From: Octopus sinensis
Lineage: Eukaryota
Length of the DNA stretch: 21,571 nucleotides
Reading direction: 5' to 3'
Assembly (NCBI RefSeq): GCF_006345805.1
Contig: NW_021823855.1
Span: 1-21,571, forward strand
Shown here: positions 2,433 through 15,572 of the stretch, piece after piece
Layout: each line of letters begins with the position of its first letter
Position numbering within the stretch: the first letter of the stretch is position 1
Notes under the pieces: model-generated
The model's database searches: none
Told to the model about the DNA's origin: nothing
The model's input: the letters and a program-made list of their open reading frames with translations, nothing else
Program-made: the position numbers and the translations under genes

Positions 2433-2507
2433 CATACTTAAATACACACAGACAGACAGATAAAACTTATGCACGCACACATACACATCAATATATATAT
2501 ATATATA

Positions 2508-2675
2508 TAACGAAGATACATTTATGCAGAGAAATATATTTTCGTGTATACATTCATATGTATGTGTGTGAGTGTGTGTGTGTGTATGAATGTGTAGATA
2601 TGTATGTATCTATGTGTGTGAGTGTGTGTATATATATATATGTATGTGTGTGTTTATGTATCTATATATATATAT

Positions 2676-2737
<62 letters not shown>

Positions 2738-2782
2738 GTGTGTGTGTATGTATACATGTACATATACGTATGTATATATATG

Positions 2783-2819
<37 letters not shown>

Positions 2820-3630
2820 ATGTACGTATCTATGTTTGCATGAATGTAAGTACATGTGTATGTAGCATAATCAATAGTACCACAATAAATATCTCACTGA
2901 CTCACTGCTCTTTGCAGTAGCAATTGTTAAAACATCTCTGTTGCCAATAAAGTCTTAATTAAACCTCACCGTTCGGTACTCAGCTCATACAGTGAGTGTG
3001 TACGTTTATGTAAGTATATACGTATGTATGCGTGTATGTAAGCATATTTGTATATGCATATATATATATATATAATATATATATATATATATAACGAAGA
3101 TACATTTATGCAGAGAAATATATTTTCGTGTATACATTCATATGTATGTGTGTGAGTGTGTGTGTGTGTATGAATGTGTAGATATGTATGTATCTATGTG
3201 TGTGAGTGTGTGTATATATATATATGTATGTGTGTGTTTATGTATCTATATATATATATGGTATATATATATATATATATTATACTATATATATATATAT
3301 ATATATATAATAGTCTGTGTGTGTGTATTATACATGTACATATACGTATGTATAATATTATGTATATATATGTATATATATATATATATGTGTGTTATGT
3401 ACGTATCTATGTTTGCATGTATGTAAGTACATGTGTATGTAGCTTAATCAATAGTACCACATAAATATCTCACTGACTCACTGCTCTTTGCAGTAGCAAT
3501 TGTTAAAACATCTCTGTTGCCAATAAAGTCTTAATTAAACCTCACCGTTCGGTACTCAGCTCATACAGTGAGTGTGTACGTTTATGTAAGTATATACGTA
3601 TGTATGCGTGTATTTAAGCATATTTGTATA

Positions 3631-3670
<40 letters not shown>
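2508..3670. repeat. Two-copy direct tandem duplication, period 584 bp
   Basis: TAACGAAGATACATTTATGCAGAGAAAT starts at 2508 and again at 3092. The non-repetitive core (~2860-3050 vs ~3437-3630) is nearly identical. Confidence 0.95.

Positions 3671-5054: not shown

Positions 5055-5106
<52 letters not shown>
5006..5106. repeat. (ATT)n microsatellite
   Basis: Seen directly in the sequence. Confidence 0.95.
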
Positions 5107-5442
5107 GAGTGAGAGAGCAGTGCATGCCATCAAAGTGACACTGGGGTAAAATATACGAAGCCCAATATACCCATCATGACCGTCTGATAAAGGTACACCA
5201 GGCACATGCATCACAACCATATGTGCGCGACATGGTGATCTCATATCAAGATAAACAGCACATGACCTTGCAGGTGGGGCCCAGTTAGAATTTTCTTCAG
5301 GTTGAGTAGCCCATCCCGCTCAAAAGGTCTCTGAATAAGGGTTGTTTAAGGATGTTGAAAGCACCACCCATGTTTCCAGAGGTGAATTATTCAAACCCCA
5401 AAGAATCCCTCTCAACACATGGCTATGATGCTCCCCCACTAC

Positions 5443-5444
<2 letters not shown>
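5107..5444 (-). mobile_element. 5'-truncated copy of the ~560-bp non-coding retroelement
   Basis: It is the reverse complement of 7035-7376 with, by eye, 6 substitutions and one 4-bp deletion. ATT tracts lie on both sides. Confidence 0.85.
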
Positions 5445-5550: not shown

Positions 5551-5848
5551 CACCAGAGAACACCCCATATCAATGTTGTCTTTTCTCTATCTCTTTATTA
5601 TAAATATGCAAACACTGAGAAGTGTTCCTCTTACTAGAAAGAGCTGTCAAACTCCTTATCGTCTTATAACAAAGCACTCCTAGGTGCATGAGTCATGAGA
5701 GCAGAGTCCTCAGGTACCTCTTCGAAAGGGTCCTATCAAAAGCAACCGTCATTAGACTTTCCGGCTGGATTTCCAAGCGCAACCAACTGGGATACTATCC
5801 AATCTTGTTCTTGGTCATAGGTTTGTTAAATCAAGCAAGATGCGTATC

Positions 5849-5851
<3 letters not shown>

Positions 5852-5890
<39 letters not shown>

Positions 5891-6114
5891 TGTATGTGTG
5901 GTGTGTGTTTGTGTGTTTGTGTGTGTGTGTGTGTGTGAGGTGTTTTTGTGTGTGTGTGTGTATGTGTGTGTGTGTGTGTTTGTGTGTTTGTGTGTGTGTG
6001 TGTGTGTGAGTGTGTTTGTGGTGTGTGTGTGTGTATGTGTGTGTGTGTGTGTTTGTGTGTTTGTGTGTGTGTGTGTGTGTGCTTGTGTGTGTGTGTATGT
6101 GTGTGTGTGTTTGT

Positions 6115-6157
<43 letters not shown>

Positions 6158-6193
6158 CGCGCGTGAACGCGTGTGTTTGTGTGTGTGTGTGTG
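5852..6193. repeat. Long imperfect (GT)n tract with internal (GC)n at 6149-6162
   Basis: Seen directly; it accounts for the CV/HT-repeat ORFs in the track. Confidence 0.95.
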
Positions 6194-6748
6194 TTCGGAA
6201 ATAGAGAATGCAAAATATATTGTAGGTTTCGTTGTTTCCAGAGAGAAGGGCTATCATTAACACACTTCACGCTGCTGGTTGTAAGTCTGGATCGACACCG
6301 TTTCTTTATGCTTCATTCTCCTTTTTACATGGTTCCTATGGAAAGAAATTAATTTCGTTTCAACAACGACAACTGCAACCACAACCAATAACCACAATGT
6401 ATTGCTGTCTGGTAGCTATCGATTTCTGTGTAATAAGCAACATATCGATCTGAGGTTTTTTCCTTTTCTTGTGGCACATCATGAGTTTTTACAAGTGATA
6501 AGCGATGAAGAATATGTCGCCTCATCATATATGAATTACATTGGTTCATTTTTTTCTTTTTTACTGTATGTTTGCCATTTCACTGTCAGTATTTTTTTGG
6601 TCAACCTAAATTCTTAACTGTCTGTCCGTCCGTCCAAAATAACAATAGTTGAATTAGTAATCGTTAAACAGTTCATAATTCAATGACAAATGTCCGTTTC
6701 TGTGTCTTTGTTTTTCGTCATCTCCACCACTGAAATAATAACACTAGC

Positions 6749-6815: not shown

Positions 6816-7376
6816 AATGCCCTGATGCAGTACCAGGCAGTGGTTCTCATGGCTTCTGATCTTAAATGATTGGAAGTGTTATCATGTACATTGTTTTGTC
6901 TTGGTATAAAAGATGGGCTACAGCAAATATTCTGCTCAATACCACAGATTTGCTTGTCAGTTGTTTGACTTTAACCAGTTGAGCATGTCCCTTAGTGTGG
7001 GGCTGACGATATGTGCATCTCTGATCACGAGCAGAAGTAGTGGGCGAGCATCATAGCCATGTGTTGAGAGGAATTCTTTGGGGTTTGAATAATTCACCTC
7101 TGGAAACATGGGTGGTTCTTTCAACATCCTTAAACAACCCTTATCCAGGGACCTTTTGAGCGGGATGGGCTACTCAACCTGAAGAAAATTCTAACTGGGC
7201 CCCACCTGCAAGGTCATGTGCTGTTTATCTTGATATGAGATCACCATGTCGCGCACATATGGTTGTGATGCATGTGCCTGGTGTACCCTTATCAGACGGG
7301 TAGTCATGATGGGTATATTGGGCTTCGTATATTTTACCCCAGTGTCACTTTGATGGCATGCACTGCTCTCTCACTC
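6816..7376 (+). mobile_element. ~560-bp non-coding retroelement (SINE-like or LINE 3'UTR-derived) embedded in (AAT)n
   Basis: It runs AAATGCCCTGATGCAG...GCACTGCTCTCTCACTC with (AAT)n on both sides. A second inverted copy lies at 5107-5444. Orientation is inferred from which end the truncated copy retains. Confidence 0.8.
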
Positions 7377-7415
<39 letters not shown>

Positions 7416-7851: not shown

Positions 7852-8050
7852 GAAAGAAGCAACAAGAATGGATTAGTTTTTAGTACAATTGTTTCATACA
7901 AAGACAGGCTTTATTACAAGTTGCAAAAATTGCAGCAGATAAAAGTGTCCCGTACACTTTTATCTGCTGCAATTTTTGCAACTTGTAATAAAGCCTGTCT
8001 TTGTATGAAACAATTCTACTAAAAACTAATCCATTCTTGTTGCTTCTTTC
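7852..8050. repeat. Near-perfect inverted repeat: 97-bp arms, 5-nt loop, one mismatch
   Basis: 7852-7948 is the reverse complement of 7954-8050. The loop is CCCGT (7949-7953) and the single mismatch is C7886/C8016. Confidence 0.97.
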
Positions 8051-8242: not shown

Positions 8243-9120
8243 GTTGACAGAGCTCTTATCCATCAATAGTTAGCATCTGCCTTAAAATCAGAAACAGAAT
8301 TGTTTATTGAACCAGCCAGGGCCAGTGCCTATTTACAAGATGCTACCAGACCAACATCTTACAGGACGGCCATAGCCCAACGTGTCGTGTGTGTAAACAA
8401 CCATCGATCATTTTGTGTCCATGTGCAGTCTTCTTGCGTCCTCAGACTTTCAACAGGCATAATAGAGCAGCACAGTATATTTAGTGGGTAATTTACAAGT
8501 ATCTGGGCCTATCCCAGAATAAAAACGGGGAGGAACACAAACCACCCCCGATGCTTGAAAATGATCATATTTCACATCTATAGAATTTTTCTGCTCAAAC
8601 TAACTAAAATGTAAATGTAAATGGGTCAAACATTATATTGGATGATTTCAGACAAAAACTCTGTTTCATCATCGATATGATTATGCCAACAGTGAAAAAT
8701 GTATCTGTCAAAACCTATCAAAAACTGAGCAAGTATAAAGATCCTGAAATAGAACTTGGCAAAATGTCGAAACTCAAGACTAGAAAAATATTTGTTGTCA
8801 TAGGTGCTCTAGGAATGATAGACAAATGCGCTGATTCTAAGAAATCCAAAAATAGAAATTAAAAATATAGTCCTCATGGGAACTTTTCATATCCTACGAA
8901 AAATACTGTCTATGTAGTTCCAAGAACATTTTAATTTGTAAACACACTATCAAATGCACTTTTAAATGTACATAACAGCAAACACCTTACACTGTCAGCG
9001 TAAGATCACACATACATCTTATCACCAGACTACTTTTGAAACAAACTTTGAATCTTCTTGAAACCTGAAACACCTTTGGAGAAGCAAGATCCCCATATTG
9101 AGATCGATCTCGATAATTTC
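8243..9120 (+). mobile_element. Decayed RLE-type (R4/Dong-like) LINE 3' portion with probable 3'UTR
   Basis: It reads VDRALIHQ*LASALKSETE..., SPTCRVCKQ..IDH (zinc knuckle), CFIIDMIMP...KLSKYKDPEIEL...VVIGALGMI, then GTFHILRKILSM* (stop ~8917). It shares protein motifs with 4370-5005 but is oppositely oriented. The 3' limit is approximate. Confidence 0.8.
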
Positions 9121-9984: not shown

Positions 9985-10381
9985 CTTGTAGTTTTATTTT
10001 TATAGCGTGCTTTCACTTCACTACCAAGCGTGTGCCTTGGGTATGTGCTGTGATTTGTTGTGATGCTCTGATGGTTATTGTATGGAAAGTGTTCTGCGTA
10101 GGATGTGGTGCAGTGCCTAGTAGTGCAATTTTCTGTATGTTATATGTGTTTGTAAGTCCTGGTGTTTTTGTTATGTATTTGTCTGAATATTTTTTTATCA
10201 TGCCTAATGCACCTACTATGATAGGAATTGTTTCTGTTTTTAGATTCCACATTCTGGTTACCTCTATTTCCAGGTCTTTGTATTTTGAGAGTTTCTCCAT
10301 TTCTTTTAGAGACACGTTGTCATCAGCCGGTATTGATACATCAATTAGAAAGCATTTTTTCTTCATGATCTTTGACAACTA

Positions 10382-10434: not shown

Positions 10435-11660
10435 TACCGCTTGACTGTCGTCTCTTGCCTTGTTTGCTGCTTGACCAAGCTGGTGCGCTTGCTCTTCTGC
10501 TTTCTGTGGAAGGGGCGCGTTCCACTGGTCAGGCGCTCTATCTGCTATAAACAGTCACTGAATGGAGGGCTGGGCTTGCCATGGTTACTGATGCGCAGAC
10601 TTGCGCTGAGGTTGCGGCATCTCCAGCGTTTCCTTGACGGTGAGCAGGTGTGGTCTCCGTTTGTAAGACACACTTTTCTACAGCTCGTCTCTTTAACAGA
10701 GCTGCAATCCTGGATTATACGTAGACCGTGGAAGGGCGCTTGGCACCTCGTGTGCCGTCAAGCGTTCATAGCCATCTGCTAGGCGGGCAATGCAGTCGAT
10801 GGTAGCTCTACTCTAGCGTTAAAAAGAGGGCTAGTGGAGGCAAGTGCGACGACTTTCTCGGGGTAACTCTGAGCGTCGATGAAGATCAACTAACCGGTCT
10901 GTTTCGGAGAACTTTCGGGCTTGGCCCAATGGATAATGTCCAGAAATCCCTTGCCTGACAGTGCTACCGAGAGGCGCTGCCTGTTCGGGATAAACTTTAC
11001 AGGCACGGACGTACCATCAGCCGGGCCTGCCCGAGGTGCGCCCAAAAGGATGAAACCGTTCTGCACGCCCTAGTTCAGTGCCCAAGTACTGTTGACCTGT
11101 GGGTTCATGTCAAACACCTGCTGTTCGTGTGGGACAGATCCACCTATCAGCTGAATCCATTGGGAAGATTACCCCGCGAGCCTCGTTTGGCTGTGAGGGG
11201 CAGGCAAGTTTTATTTGTCTAGTGGCTGCAGCGAAAGAGGTAGTATGGTGAATCCCTTTGAAAGGGCTACACACAGACACTTTTCTCTTTGACCAAGCCC
11301 GCTTCAACTTTTTCAAGTTTCACTTGAAAAGGAAGTTGATGGTGGAGAGGAAATTGTTACCTTGTAGCAAGTTTGTTGAAAAGTGTGTGAATGTTGGATG
11401 AATGGCCAGTGTGAAAGGATCAATTCTGAGCGCGCAGCTGTACACAAAAGGTGAAGGGCTCTTGCCCTCGTAGCTTTTGTGTTTTTTCCACGAGGTCCTT
11501 AAAGCGCCTCCTCTGGTGGGAGTTTTAAATTGTTTAATCTTTAATTATCTATATTGTTTACACGTCGTAAACCCTATTGTATCGTCCTGTTTTTGTCTTT
11601 TATGTTGTTGTATGTCTTTTAATGTAATTTTATGTGAGCTCTTGTGGCCAATAAAAGAAT
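10435..11660 (+). mobile_element. 5'-truncated Tx1/L1-like LINE (post-RT region, CCHC knuckle, 3'UTR, AATAAA)
   Basis: It reads FLWKGRVPLVRRSICYKQSLNGGLGLP (the 'P...GGLGL' motif of L1/Tx1 ORF2) and LPVRDKLYRHG...CPRCAQKDETVLHALVQCP..VDLW (C-x2-C-x8-H-x4-C from 11028). AATAAA lies at 11650-11655, followed by (ATC/ATT)n. Several stops and frameshifts are present. Confidence 0.85.
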
Positions 11661-11736: not shown

Positions 11737-12130
11737 AAGTGAACGATATTTCGACATCTCGTGCAACTTCCACAGGTTAAATAAATAAACTTGCCAATCT
11801 ACTTCATTTTGGTAATATTTTTAGGATTAAGGTTACTCCTCCAGAAAGTACAGAAGCAAAAAAATAAATAAAAGATGTCATCAAGTGAAATATATTTGAC
11901 ATCTCGTGTGTGTTTTTTTTTTCTTGCTTCTATAGTTTCTGGGGGAATTATTTCAGTCGTATAAATGTTACCAAAATGAAGTAGATTGACAAGTTTATCT
12001 TTTTTAACCTGTGGAAGACACACAAGATGTGGAAATATCGTTCACTTGATAACAATGGCACTCTTCTTTGTTGGTTTTTTTTTTTTGCTTCTATACTTTC
12101 TTGATGAGTAACTTCAATCCTATAAATATT
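11737..12130. repeat. Imperfect fold-back repeat (~130-bp arms) plus a third partial copy
   Basis: 11737-11864 is the imperfect reverse complement of ~11913-12047. 12075-12130 is a second reverse-complement copy of ~11814-11866. Confidence 0.85.
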
Positions 12131-12134
12131 ATTA

Positions 12135-12189
<55 letters not shown>

Positions 12190-12242
12190 TATTTATCATC
12201 ATCATTATTATTATTATCATTATCATTATTATTATTATTATA

Positions 12243-12291
<49 letters not shown>

Positions 12292-12390
12292 CATTATTAT
12301 TATTATCATTATCATTATTATTATTATTACTATTATTATTATTATTATTATTATTATTATCATCATCATCATCATCATTATTATTATTAT
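12127..12390. repeat. Long (ATT)n/(ATC)n microsatellite
   Basis: Seen directly; it accounts for the poly-N/poly-I ORFs. Confidence 0.95.
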
Positions 12391-12531: not shown

Positions 12532-12576
12532 CTAATGCTTTTATTGCCATTGATTGTCATCTTTTCTTTTTCCTAG
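12532..12576 (+). promoter_or_regulatory. 3' splice acceptor (putative branch point CTAAT, polypyrimidine tract, AG)
   Basis: CTAAT at 12532-12536 is followed by CATCTTTTCTTTTTCCTAG ending at 12576. The AG coincides with the in-frame TAG that bounds the open frame, and the S1 sequence begins immediately after it. Confidence 0.85.
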
Positions 12577-13644
12577 ATATATGGAATTACATCGTTTCTT
12601 TTCGTGGTCCTGTCCATTTTGGGTTTCTGCCTGGAAACGCTGCCTCAAGTCCGAGGCCCCACCAACATCACACGGCAATGCAACGGAGAGACTAGCGAAA
12701 GTCTGCAAGTGATGCAGTCCCATGATGCGCTAAACGTCATTGATGTCATCTGTACCATCTTCTTCACACTGGAGTTAATAGCCCGATTTATATTTGCTCC
12801 GCAGAAATTGAAGTTCGTTCGTTCTTTAATGAATATTATAGACTTACTGGCTCTCGTGCCACTTTACGTACAAGTCATTCTACATTCAACTGATCCAGAA
12901 TTCTGTTATCTAAATGAACGACTTGTGATGGAAATTATGTTTATTTTGCGTATTATTCGCATGTTTCGAATTTTCCATCTTGTTAAACATTACCAAGCGC
13001 TAAAAATATTAGTTTATGCCATGAAAGCAAGCATTCAAGAACTGCTTATGTTGGCTATATTTATGATTATTGCTATGCTTGTATTTGCTACAATGATCTA
13101 TTACGCAGAACGCAAAGATGCAACGAACGCTAGCGATTCGTTCAACACAATCCCTATGGGGTTTTGGTGGGCAATCATCACCATGACAACGGTTGGTTAC
13201 GGAGACGTTTATCCGTCTTCCACGATTGGCTATATTGTCGGTGCTGGATGTGCACTCAGTGGAGTGCTCCTAGTTGCCCTCACCATCCCTGTCATCTCGA
13301 ACAATTTCACCCTCTTTTACACACACGTCAGATCGCGCTCCAGCGAACGCCGGGTAAGTCGCACATTCCAAGGTGGATCCGAGATTCTCGAACACCACGA
13401 TCCCACCAATAATTTTGATCGTCGCTCGTCCAATTCGTCTGTGGTTCTGGAAACCTTCATGAATGGCACTGTGGCCGTTCATAAAATGAACAATCCGCTA
13501 TACGCGACTCTACCGTATGCCGACCGTACATCAATTTCAGACAATGGTATGGAAGACGACATGGACTCAGACCGAACCATAAGCAGAAATGGTTCTTTTC
13601 GAACACTAGACCTAACTGAGCCCAAGCCTGAAACACGTTTATGA
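12577..13644 (+). CDS. Shaw: Final (or major) coding exon of a Shaw/Kv3-family voltage-gated K+ channel subunit: S1-S6, pore and C-terminus (355 aa; T1 exon outside window)
   Basis: A phase-0 exon starts IYGITSFLFVVLSILGFCLETLP (S1). S2 is FFTLELIARF, S3 NIIDLLAL, S4 LRIIRMFRIFHLVKH, S5 ASIQELL...FATMIYYAER (matches the Kv3 motif), pore WWAIITMTTVGYGD (TVGYGD at 13189-13206) and S6 ...VISNNF. The stop TGA is at 13642-13644. The family call is solid; exact orthology within Kv3/Shaw is not established. Confidence 0.93.
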   Translation: MYGITSFLFVVLSILGFCLETLPQVRGPTNITRQCNGETSESLQVMQSHDALNVIDVICTIFFTLELIARFIFAPQKLKFVRSLMNIIDLLALVPLYVQVILHSTDPEFCYLNERLVMEIMFILRIIRMFRIFHLVKHYQALKILVYAMKASIQELLMLAIFMIIAMLVFATMIYYAERKDATNASDSFNTIPMGFWWAIITMTTVGYGDVYPSSTIGYIVGAGCALSGVLLVALTIPVISNNFTLFYTHVRSRSSERRVSRTFQGGSEILEHHDPTNNFDRRSSNSSVVLETFMNGTVAVHKMNNPLYATLPYADRTSISDNGMEDDMDSDRTISRNGSFRTLDLTEPKPETRL

Positions 13645-14043: not shown

Positions 14044-14109
14044 CCACTGCATATATGCAAGTACACGCGTGATGACATATGTGTACATATACATATATAG
14101 ATGTGTGTA

Positions 14110-14120
14110 AATACATATAA

Positions 14121-14165
<45 letters not shown>

Positions 14166-14215
14166 TATAATAACGAATATATTAGATACATATATATATT
14201 TATGTATATGTAATA

Positions 14216-14251
<36 letters not shown>

Positions 14252-14768
14252 TGGTAAACAGGACTATTCGTCCATACCTAAAATTTTCGTGCAATCGAAT
14301 GTACTCCTATGTGTAACAGAACTTTTATCAGTGAGTTAAATAACAAAATAACAATTTAGGTACTAAAGAGTGTTGTATTCAATTGACTGGTCATTATAAT
14401 TCACGTAAGCCATACGACATTATCGATCACGTGACCAGTAAAAGGCATCCAACACGTTTAAATATACTCAGTAAATGTTTATTATTTCAGACTCGTTGAT
14501 CAGCACGCTTGACTGGAAAAGAAATCGATCGCACGAAACCATTAGGTAATAGAACATAACCCTGTTTATCCACATAAGCTAGTAACAGACACTACACATT
14601 TCTAACAGGGCTGTATATAGAACACTTAGGTGTTTTGTACGAAAAAAAAACAATCAATCAAAAATAACACTATCAAATGTATATATATATATATATATAT
14701 TTACATATAAGCATATACATAAATGCGCGTCTATGTGTACATATAGTTATATACATACATACATATAT

Positions 14769-14803
<35 letters not shown>

Positions 14804-14821
14804 CATATATATACATATCTA

Positions 14822-14902
<81 letters not shown>

Positions 14903-14914
14903 TATTACTATATA

Positions 14915-14962
<48 letters not shown>

Positions 14963-14994
14963 TATATATAATATATATCTATATATATATATTA

Positions 14995-15033
<39 letters not shown>

Positions 15034-15572
15034 TCTACCATTGCAAAAACGAAAATGGCAAATTATTTTTTTTTCTTCTATTTTTTACTAGTTTTCATCA
15101 AGTTTTTGTTTTTATTTTTTATTCTTAGATATATATTTTTTTTTATATTACAGCTTGCGTATTTTATTTTTTATTGTGCTGTTCAAGCTGTACAGATAAT
15201 GTCGAATGATATTTATCTACCCCTTTCTATTATATATTTCATTTGTATATGTAATTCTTTATTTTTGATTTACGTTTCGAGTCTGCATCAATCATTCTCA
15301 ATATTTTGTTGTTAAAACTCGGTGTAATGCTGAACAAGTACAATAAAAAAAGCAAAATCCGCAAGTTACAAAAAAACTTGACGGTAAACTACTTAAACCG
15401 TGTTATTGTCATTTTTTCAATGGTGCATACATCGAACAGAAAAATACTGATATCTCGCTGCGTCTTGTTAAAAATGTAAGATCATATATATATATATTGT
15501 GTGTGTGATGTGTGTGTGATGGGTGTGTGGTGGGTGTGTGCTTATATATGTATATTTTATATACATATATAT

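What the first reader, a model, noticed from the sequence alone, without database searches (positions are those of the whole stretch)
13261..13308. Kv3/Shaw subunit with a broken S6 gate (TIPVIS instead of PVPVIV): candidate regulatory/'silent' subunit in a cephalopod
Seen: S6 reads GVLLVAL-TIPVIS-NNF (TIPVIS at 13282-13299), while the filter TVGYGD and the hinge Gly are intact and the frame has no lesions. Established: homotetramer-forming Kv1, Kv3 and Kv4 channels carry PVPVIV (Kv2 carries PIPIIV). Vertebrate KvS subunits (Kv5/6/8/9) and cnidarian regulatory Shaker-family subunits have substitutions in this motif and function only as heteromers. Inference: this may be an independently evolved regulatory Shaw subunit, with the first proline lost (P>T) plus V>I and V>S. 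A-to-I editing cannot turn ACC back into a Pro codon, so the change is hard-wired. I do not know of a functional description of such a subunit in cephalopods, but cannot search.
Basis: partly seen in the sequence, partly recalled or inferred. Interest (0 to 1): 0.78.

Follow-up and report, generated by a model that had tools for sequence, protein, structure and literature searches.

The report
Octopus ortholog of Aplysia aKv5.1 channel
The odd S6 motif is real, but it is the ancient, strictly conserved signature of a mollusc/annelid branch of Shaw-type potassium channels whose Aplysia member was cloned in 1994 as a working non-inactivating channel, so it is most likely not a newly evolved "silent" subunit.

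Summary
Window 13261-13308 (+) encodes GVLLVALTIPVISNNF, with TIPVIS at 13282-13299. It lies in one long terminal exon (12577-13644) encoding S1-S6 and the C-tail of a Kv alpha subunit.

The "independently evolved silent subunit in a cephalopod" reading is not supported.
- The exon product is 100% identical to Octopus vulgaris "voltage-gated channel Shaw-like".
- All 120 best database relatives carry TIPVIS or a one-residue variant. They include cephalopods, gastropods and bivalves. The annelid Owenia, found in a separate search, also has TIPVIS.
- Aplysia "noninactivating potassium channel" (aKv5.1, Zhao et al. 1994) has the same S4, filter and S6.
- Vertebrate silent KvS subunits lose the second proline of PXP. 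This clade loses the first. All 186 aligned Shaw-like and outgroup cores keep the second, and 144 lack the first.
- Against a cephalopod cDNA, dN/dS in the S1-S6 core is 0.006, and 7 of 16 S6 codons differ only synonymously. This excludes an assembly error or a pseudogene.
- The T1 domain of the orthologs is Shaw/Kv3-type.

Most likely this is a functional, non-inactivating aKv5.1-type channel. The octopus protein itself has not been tested. The finding is already known and of low interest.

The parts
12577..13644 (+). Last coding exon of the Octopus aKv5.1-type Shaw-family Kv channel gene. It encodes S1-S6 plus the cytoplasmic C-tail (355 aa) and the TGA stop at 13642-13644.
   Evidence: Translation. 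Pfam Ion_trans 5.9e-43. 100% identical to O. vulgaris CAI9727187.1 and 354/355 identical to O. bimaculoides XP_014773845.1.
12555..12576 (+). Polypyrimidine tract and AG splice acceptor (AG at 12575-12576) of the intron before S1. The T1-domain exons lie upstream, outside the window.
   Evidence: Sequence GTCATCTTTTCTTTTTCCTAG|ATAT. The junction ...RPAM|IYGITS is seen in the gene models and in the cDNA. tblastn finds no T1 exon in the window. The gene spans about 149 kb in O. bimaculoides.
12922..12990 (+). S4 voltage sensor LVMEIMFILRIIRMFRIFHLVKH. Relative to Kv3.1, R1 is Phe, R2-R4 are Arg, K5 is His and R6 is Lys.
   Evidence: Alignment to Kv3.1. The segment FILRIIRMFRIFHLVKHYQALK is identical in Octopus, Argonauta, Aplysia aKv5.1 and Lottia.
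13189..13206 (+). Selectivity filter TVGYGD.
   Evidence: G-Y-G-D are invariant in alignment A1.
13225..13320 (+). S6 inner helix IGYIVGAGCALSGVLLVALTIPVISNNFTLFY. The hinge Gly is retained. The first PXP proline is Thr and the second proline is retained. The residue equivalent to Shaker gate residue V478 is Ser, and the F484 equivalent is retained.
   Evidence: T236, P238, I240, S241, N243 and F244 are invariant in 59 clade members. [quoted passage not shown]
13282..13299 (+). TIPVIS, the flagged motif (ACC ATC CCT GTC ATC TCG).
   Evidence: The cDNA ortholog reads ACT ATC CCG GTT ATC TCC, the same amino acids through 4 synonymous changes.
13321..13641 (+). Cytoplasmic C-terminal tail, Ser-rich and faster evolving.
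   Evidence: dN/dS is 0.131 in the tail against 0.006 in the S1-S6 core.

Best explanation
The window holds the terminal exon of the Octopus ortholog of Aplysia aKv5.1 ('noninactivating potassium channel'). This is a divergent, lophotrochozoan branch of the Shaw/Kv3 family.

TIPVIS is not a broken gate. It is the ancestral S6 of this branch, held under very strong purifying selection. S6 keeps the hinge Gly and the second proline of PXP (the Shaker P475 equivalent), which all 186 aligned relatives and outgroups keep. It lacks only the first proline, and it carries Ser at the hydrophobic gate position (the Shaker V478 equivalent).

My inference is that four such subunits, assembled through a Shaw-type Zn-binding T1 domain, form a conducting, voltage-dependent, non-inactivating K+ channel like aKv5.1. 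I also infer that the polar gate residue and the altered S4 (R1 to F, K5 to H) bias the channel toward opening near rest, so that it contributes to resting potential and firing pattern.

Shown here: gene identity, orthology, motif conservation, selection, and T1 type in the orthologs. Inferred: homotetramer function in octopus, and any link between the S6/S4 substitutions and the gating phenotype.
For: - Identity: 100% to O. vulgaris 'Shaw-like', 354/355 to O. bimaculoides 'Shaw', 96% to Argonauta.
- Clade: all 120 best hits have TIPVIS (82), TFPVIS (34) or a one-residue variant. The annelid Owenia has TIPVIS.
- NJ tree: the mollusc clade has n=108 and bootstrap 0.93; a second TIPVIS clade containing Owenia has n=13 and bootstrap 0.90.
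- Aplysia aKv5.1 (NP_001191593.1/AAA62590.1/Q16976) is 69% identical over 295 aa. It is identical in S4 (FILRIIRMFRIFHLVKHYQALK), in the filter and in S6 (SGVLLVALTIPVISNNFTLFY).
- Function of the archetype: the title of Zhao et al. 1994, and its citation as an S-K channel candidate of the Shaker family (PMC2229393).
- Selection: against cDNA contig L001, dN/dS is 0.006 in the S1-S6 core with dS above 2.
- Expression: an uninterrupted 553-aa ORF sits on a 2.2-kb RNA-seq contig, although the gene spans 149-251 kb in genomes.
- T1 of the ortholog: Kv3.1 125 bits, Aplysia Shaw T1 (3KVT) 119, Kv2.1 92, Kv4 66, Kv1 46. The HX5CX20CC motif is readable in P0001, P0002 and P0263.
- Prolines: the second proline is present in 186/186 aligned cores and the first is absent in 144/186.
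- Fold search on the predicted structure: Kv3.1 is the best match.
Against: - No functional data exist for the octopus protein.
- I could not read Zhao et al. 1994. That aKv5.1 gave currents when expressed alone rests on its title, the database name, a citing paper and my memory.
- Alanine substitutions of the PXP prolines are poorly tolerated in Kv1.5 and Shaker (PMC3440756), so loss of the first proline is not trivially neutral.
- The first half of the T1 domain is missing from both Octopus gene models (one starts with a Mos1 transposase HTH). I could not verify it in Octopus DNA.
- The NJ backbone joining this clade to canonical Shaw is weak (bootstrap 0.49 or less).
- Strong conservation alone does not separate a conducting subunit from a silent one.
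Confidence: 0.75

Rival explanations
1. One reading: an obligate-heteromer ('silent' or regulatory) Shaw subunit that conducts only when co-assembled with canonical PVPVIV Shaw subunits.
For: - The T1 domain is Shaw-type, so co-assembly with other Shaw subunits is structurally plausible.
- The PXP motif is altered, and PXP prolines are sensitive to mutation in Kv1.5 and Shaker.
- Shaw genes are strongly expanded in lophotrochozoans (Lottia 13, Capitella 9). For the cnidarian Shaw and Shal expansions, Jegla et al. speculate that some members may be regulatory subunits (PMC3519636).
Against: - The Aplysia ortholog, with identical S4, filter and S6, is the 'noninactivating potassium channel' aKv5.1.
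- KvS subunits lack the second proline, which is retained here.
- The motif is not a cephalopod innovation.
- First-proline-less S6 variants are widespread among Shaw-like proteins.
Confidence: 0.1
2. A conducting subunit that also heteromerises in vivo with other Shaw-family paralogs through the shared T1 type, so that its native role is partly modulatory.
For: The T1 is Shaw/Kv3-like. Molluscs carry many Shaw paralogs.
Against: No co-expression or co-assembly data exist. T1 similarity to Kv3.1 does not prove compatibility between paralogs that diverged this long ago.
Confidence: 0.12
3. Artefact: an assembly or sequencing error, or a decaying pseudogene exon.
For: The window is a short, repeat-rich 21.6-kb contig. 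Both Octopus gene models have defective N-termini.
Against: The same motif appears in four independent cephalopod sources, including cDNA. dN/dS is 0.006 in the core. The frame is open for 355 codons with an intact acceptor and stop.
Confidence: 0.01
4. A channel whose main conductance is non-canonical, such as an omega (gating-pore) current like flatworm N.at-Kv3.2, because S4 lacks a basic residue at R1.
For: R1 is Phe and K5 is His. N.at-Kv3.2 is a lophotrochozoan Shaw-family channel with His at R1 and Gly at R3, and it conducts through the gating pore (PMC2443804).
Against: Here R1 is a bulky Phe, not a small residue, and R2-R4 are all Arg. Omega currents in Shaker arise when R1 is replaced by His, Ala, Cys, Ser or Val. 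The database name and the citing paper present aKv5.1 simply as a K+ channel. That its current is K+-selective rests on my memory of the paper.
Confidence: 0.02

Closest known systems
Aplysia californica aKv5.1, 'noninactivating potassium channel' (NP_001191593.1 / AAA62590.1 / UniProt Q16976; Zhao et al. 1994, Neuron 13:1205)
   Same: Same clade (bootstrap 0.93). 69% identical over 295 aligned residues. Identical S4 core, TVGYGD filter and S6 SGVLLVALTIPVISNNFTLFY. Same T1 type in the orthologs.
   Different: Different class of mollusc. The C-terminal tail has diverged. The octopus protein has never been expressed or recorded.
Canonical Shaw/Kv3 channels (human Kv3.1, PDB 7PHH; Aplysia Shaw T1, PDB 3KVT; insect-type and Lymnaea PVPVIV Shaw)
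   Same: Best PDB match for both the TM core (202 bits) and the T1 domain (125 and 119 bits). Same six-TM architecture. NNF follows the S6 motif. Zn-binding HX5CX20CC in T1.
   Different: S6 is TIPVIS rather than PVPVIV. The filter is TVGYGD rather than TLGYGD. In S4, R1 is Phe and K5 is His. Only 36-43% identical in the core. Grouping with canonical Shaw in the NJ tree is weakly supported.
Vertebrate electrically silent KvS subunits (Kv5, Kv6, Kv8, Kv9)
   Same: Shaker-superfamily alpha subunits with a non-canonical PXP motif.
   Different: KvS subunits lack the SECOND proline (PMC3440756), whereas this protein lacks the first and keeps the second. KvS subunits belong to the Shab/Kv2 expansion (PMC3519636), whereas this protein has a Shaw-type T1. 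The archetype of this clade was described as a current-carrying channel.
Cnidarian regulatory Shaker subunits (NvShakR1-14; Jegla et al. 2012, PMC3519636)
   Same: A lineage-specific expansion of a Kv subfamily.
   Different: They belong to the Shaker/Kv1 subfamily. Their silent phenotype was established by experiment, not from S6 motifs. They have no specific relationship to this clade.
Flatworm N.at-Kv3.2 (PMC2443804)
   Same: A lophotrochozoan Shaw-family channel with a non-basic residue at S4 position R1.
   Different: It has His at R1 and Gly at R3 and conducts an omega current. Here R1 is Phe and R3 is Arg.

Membership tests
Shaker-superfamily voltage-gated K+ channel alpha subunit (Kv1-4 type) | Six-TM ion-transport domain with an S4 basic repeat | tested here: met
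   Pfam Ion_trans 5.9e-43. S4 is LRIIRMFRIFHLVKH with three Arg, one His and one Lys at every-third positions.
Shaker-superfamily voltage-gated K+ channel alpha subunit (Kv1-4 type) | K+ selectivity filter T-V-G-Y-G-D | tested here: met
   TVGYGD at 13189-13206.
Shaker-superfamily voltage-gated K+ channel alpha subunit (Kv1-4 type) | S6 hinge Gly plus the PXP motif | tested here: inconclusive
   The hinge Gly and the second proline are present. The first proline is Thr. In 186 aligned relatives and outgroups the second proline is universal and the first is absent in 144.
Shaker-superfamily voltage-gated K+ channel alpha subunit (Kv1-4 type) | N-terminal T1 (BTB_2) tetramerisation domain | tested here: inconclusive
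   Not encoded in the window. Complete in the Argonauta ortholog and the cephalopod cDNA ortholog (PF02214). Only the C-terminal half is present in the two Octopus gene models, whose N-termini are mispredicted.
Shaw / Kv3 subfamily | T1 domain of the Shaw type with the Zn-binding HX5CX20CC motif | tested here: met
   Ortholog T1 scores: Kv3.1 125 bits, 3KVT 119, Kv2.1 92, Kv4 66, Kv1 46. H-VPLDV-C-(20 residues)-CC is readable in P0001, P0002 and P0263.
Shaw / Kv3 subfamily | Phylogenetic grouping with canonical Shaw to the exclusion of Kv1, Kv2 and Kv4 | tested here: inconclusive
   In the NJ tree all Shaw-like sequences separate from the Kv1-like and Kv2-like outgroups at bootstrap 0.49 only. 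PDB core scores are Kv3.1 202, Kv1.3 192 and Kv2.1 178 bits. Lottia L.gig_103377, a member of this clade, was used in the Jegla et al. 2012 phylogeny, which counts 13 Shaw genes in Lottia. Its placement among them is inferred, not read directly.
aKv5.1-type clade (lophotrochozoan 'noninactivating K+ channel') | Signature S6 AL-T-[I/F]-P-V-I-S-N-N-F with signature S4 FILRIIRMFRIFHLVKHYQALK | tested here: met
   Identical to Aplysia aKv5.1 in both segments. Invariant T, P, I, S, N and F in 59 aligned members.
aKv5.1-type clade (lophotrochozoan 'noninactivating K+ channel') | Monophyly with aKv5.1 | tested here: met
   Mollusc clade of 108 sequences, bootstrap 0.93 (NJ, 200 replicates).
aKv5.1-type clade (lophotrochozoan 'noninactivating K+ channel') | Non-inactivating K+ current when expressed alone | not testable with these tools
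   Needs electrophysiology. For Aplysia it rests on Zhao et al. 1994 (title and citing text only).
Electrically silent / regulatory Kv subunits (KvS-like) | Loss of the second proline of PXP (the KvS hallmark) | tested here: not met
   The second proline is retained (CCT at 13288-13290). The KvS hallmark is stated in PMC3440756.
Electrically silent / regulatory Kv subunits (KvS-like) | No current as a homotetramer, and modulation of a partner in heteromers | not testable with these tools
   Needs expression. The ortholog's published description argues against it.

The most novel reading that the evidence does not exclude
The T-x-P / Ser-gate S6, together with the R1-less, His-at-K5 S4, is a coupled and 500-My-conserved solution that turns a Shaw-type Kv channel into a voltage-dependent 'background' K+ conductance (S-K-like) across Lophotrochozoa. 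Under this reading the octopus ortholog sets resting potential in cephalopod neurons, possibly also tuning canonical Shaw channels through T1-compatible heteromers. The S6 and S4 determinants of this phenotype have, as far as I could find, never been dissected.
Probability: 0.15. Interest if true: 0.45.

Novelty: already known. Interest (0 to 1): 0.15.

Why it matters
As filed (a newly evolved silent Shaw subunit in cephalopods) it would have been a third independent origin of regulatory Kv subunits. The evidence says otherwise. It is the annotated octopus ortholog of a channel class cloned from Aplysia in 1994, and the motif is that class's ancestral S6.

Some modest value remains. Across 186 Shaw-like and outgroup cores the second PXP proline is universal while the first is absent in 144. 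A whole clade also carries Ser at the hydrophobic gate position. That is a natural experiment for the role of each proline and of the V478-equivalent residue in Kv gating.

The work also flags that both Octopus gene models for this locus have mispredicted N-termini.

Tried and rejected
- T1 exon in the window: tblastn with the ortholog N-termini found nothing. The gene DNA could not be fetched because the gene spans 149 kb in O. bimaculoides and 251 kb in Argonauta. Exon 1 in Octopus is therefore unverified.
- Zhao et al. 1994 is not held in the library, and a guessed PMC id for a paper on S-like K+ channels also failed. Full-text searches for aKv5.1 returned only citing papers without biophysical detail.
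- The search for cephalopod Shaw/Kv3 literature found nothing relevant.
- The AlphaFold2 monomer of the core was only moderate (mean pLDDT 73, pTM 0.49). DSSP shows S6 as one continuous helix, so the model says nothing useful about the kink. Foldseek only confirmed Kv3.1 as the best match.
- The NJ bootstrap tree resolves the clade but not the backbone. No ML or Bayesian program was available.
- Rfam and tRNA scans of the window were empty.
- Pfam found nothing in the retroelement-like intron ORFs.
- Pseudogene or assembly artefact was considered and rejected.
- An omega-current analogy with N.at-Kv3.2 was considered and judged unlikely.

Full report
**1. Observation**

Window 13261-13308 (+) reads GGA GTG CTC CTA GTT GCC CTC ACC ATC CCT GTC ATC TCG AAC AAT TTC, which is GVLLVALTIPVISNNF. 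TIPVIS lies at 13282-13299.

It sits in a single open exon. A pyrimidine tract and AG acceptor end at 12576. Coding runs from 12577 to 13641 and is followed by TGA at 13642-13644.

The 355-aa product contains:
- S1 (12586-12642), S2 (12730-12795), S3 (12826-12882) and S4 (12922-12990);
- the S4-S5 linker and S5;
- the pore helix and TVGYGD filter (13189-13206);
- S6 (13225-13320) and a Ser-rich tail.

Pfam Ion_trans scores E=5.9e-43.

**2. What the gene is**

The exon product is 100% identical to Octopus vulgaris CAI9727187.1 "voltage-gated channel Shaw-like". It is 354/355 identical to O. bimaculoides XP_014773845.1 "potassium voltage-gated channel protein Shaw" and 96% identical to Argonauta hians "Shaw-like". 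A 355-aa protein from a 21,571-bp NCBI contig sits in the same cluster, so the window appears to be a whole contig of an Octopus assembly.

Only the last coding exon is in the window. tblastn with the ortholog N-termini finds no T1 exon. The gene spans about 149 kb in O. bimaculoides and about 251 kb in Argonauta.

The T1 domain of the Argonauta ortholog scores as follows against solved structures:
- Kv3.1: 125 bits
- Aplysia Shaw T1 (3KVT): 119 bits
- Kv2.1: 92 bits
- Kv4: 66 bits
- Kv1: 46 bits

The non-Shaker Zn motif HX5CX20CC is readable in the Octopus models too (HVPLDVCGAVVKRELDFWEIDEFEIKACC).

The TM core is less decisive: Kv3.1 202 bits, Kv1.3 192, Shaker 184, Kv2.1 178 and Kv4.2 160. 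An AlphaFold2 model of moderate quality (mean pLDDT 73) also hits Kv3.1 first. So Shaw-family membership is supported mainly by the T1 domain and by database names.

**3. The motif defines an old clade, not a cephalopod novelty**

All 120 best hits in the 5.8-billion-protein search carry T-[I/F]-P-V-I-S or a one-residue variant: 82 TIPVIS, 34 TFPVIS, one TIPIIS, and three TIPVIS followed by MNF or HNF. They come from cephalopods, gastropods (Haliotis, Patella, Lottia, Aplysia, Lymnaea, Pomacea and others) and bivalves (Mytilus, Pecten, Mercenaria and others).

An exhaustive HMMER search of 1.84 billion representatives adds the annelid Owenia fusiformis with TIPVIS.

I built an NJ tree of 186 complete cores with 200 bootstraps.
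- The molluscan T[I/F]PVIS clade has 108 sequences and bootstrap 0.93.
- A second TIPVIS clade that contains Owenia has 13 sequences and bootstrap 0.90.
- The union of the two clades and the deeper backbone are weakly supported.

In a 59-member alignment, T236, P238, I240, S241, N243 and F244 are invariant.

**4. The first proline is widely dispensable in Shaw-like channels; the second is not**

All 186 aligned cores have Pro at the third motif position. 144 of them lack Pro at the first position.

Besides TIPVIS and TFPVIS, lophotrochozoan Shaw-like proteins show:
- TVPIIV (Elysia)
- SVPVIV (Lottia 171056)
- AVPIIA (the nemertean Lineus)
- SVPAIV, TVPIVV and TIPILS (sources unnamed)

Canonical PVPVIV is found in vertebrate Kv3, in insect-like Shaw and in a Lymnaea Shaw.

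Jegla et al. 2012 already reported the Shaw expansion in lophotrochozoans: 13 Shaw genes in Lottia and 9 in Capitella. They included Lottia 103377, a member of this clade, in their phylogeny (PMC3519636).

**5. Not an artefact or pseudogene**

A 2,172-nt Logan contig from run SRR25158133 (L001) carries an uninterrupted 553-aa ortholog with a complete T1 domain. Given the very large genomic introns, this must be cDNA.

Nei-Gojobori comparison with the window exon gives the following:
- S1-S6 core: dS above 2 (saturated), dN = 0.017, dN/dS = 0.006.
- C-terminal tail: dN/dS = 0.131.

Within the 16 S6 codons, 7 differ and all 7 changes are synonymous. These include the Thr, Pro, Val and Ser codons of the motif.

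**6. Function**

The Aplysia member of the clade is P0012, which is NP_001191593.1 / AAA62590.1 / UniProt Q16976, named "noninactivating potassium channel". It is 69% identical over 295 residues. It is identical to the octopus protein in S4 (FILRIIRMFRIFHLVKHYQALK), in the filter and in S6 (SGVLLVALTIPVISNNFTLFY).

This is aKv5.1 of Zhao et al. [quoted passage not shown] I could not read the original paper. That the clone was expressed alone in oocytes and neurons is from my memory, and is consistent with the title and the database name.

On this basis the most likely function of the octopus gene is a conducting, non-inactivating Kv channel.

**7. Mechanistic reading (inference)**

Labro and Snyders state that S6 bends at PXP, that Shaker V478 and F484 are the proposed gate residues, and that all silent KvS subunits lack the second proline (PMC3440756).

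Using Shaker numbering, the octopus S6 has T473, I474, P475, V476, I477, S478, N479, N480, F481, T482, L483 and F484. It therefore keeps the universally conserved P475 and F484, loses P473, and places a polar Ser at the hydrophobic seal (V478).

S4 has Phe at R1, Arg at R2-R4, His at K5 and Lys at R6.

I infer that a less hydrophobic gate, together with an altered sensor, favours opening at negative voltages. This would fit a channel said to contribute to the resting potential. It is untested.

**8.

The family and taxon calls are right, and the motif is real. The "independently evolved silent subunit" inference is not supported, for four reasons:
- the motif is ancestral to molluscs and is shared with an annelid;
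- the archetype of the clade is a described channel;
- the KvS analogy concerns the other proline;
- first-proline-less S6 variants are common in Shaw-like proteins.

A partly modulatory role through T1-compatible heteromers cannot be excluded.

**9. Novelty and score**

The gene is annotated, its family archetype was cloned in 1994, and the lophotrochozoan Shaw expansion was published in 2012. The finding is therefore already known and of low interest (0.15).

Some interest remains in the natural variation at the two PXP prolines and at the gate residue.

Noticed in passing
outside the window: N-termini of XP_014773845.1 (P0001) and CAI9727187.1 (P0263): Both Octopus gene models for this locus look mispredicted at the 5' end. 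P0001 starts with about 105 aa that match a Mos1 transposase HTH (PF17906, E=4.9e-14) in place of the first half of T1. P0263 starts 22 aa before 'GELHVPLDV'. Argonauta and the cDNA contig have a complete T1.
   Followed up: partly
window 5068-5444 and 7035-7415: Long inverted repeat in the intron. The arms are about 380 nt in total (265 nt at 98% plus 113 nt at 100% complementary) and enclose about 1.6 kb. ORFs on the arms share 'SHDGYIGLRIFYPSVTLMACTALSLNNN'. It may be a foldback or TIR element, or an inverted duplication.
   Followed up: no
window 7852-8050: Near-perfect palindrome with 97-nt arms, 99% complementary, and a 5-nt spacer.
   Followed up: no
window 2482-3650: Two copies, about 576-584 bp apart, of a block rich in TG/TA microsatellite. 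2490-2725 matches 3074-3309 at 98%, and 2885-3074 matches 3461-3650 at 99%.
   Followed up: no
window 8638-8862 (+) and 10013-10378 (-): Two ORF fragments share a motif (C-F-[IL]-ID...P...NV..K...KLSKYKD.EIE...M..LKT..I...GALGMI). They look like remnants of one interspersed repeat, possibly the tail of a retroelement ORF. No Pfam match.
   Followed up: partly
window 10500-11500: An island of 44-51% GC in an intron that is otherwise 20-38% GC. No tRNA or Rfam hit, and no Pfam match in its longest ORF. Unexplained.
   Followed up: no
window 12120-12390 and throughout: Very dense microsatellites: (ATT/ATC)n for about 270 nt about 190 nt upstream of the splice acceptor, (TG)n at 5830-6200, (TA)n at 14090-15050, and more. 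They generate most of the long spurious ORFs.
   Followed up: no
window 13138-13140: This is the only amino-acid difference from the O. bimaculoides protein. The window, O. vulgaris, Argonauta and the cDNA ortholog have Ser188 (TCG). O. bimaculoides has Ala.
   Followed up: yes
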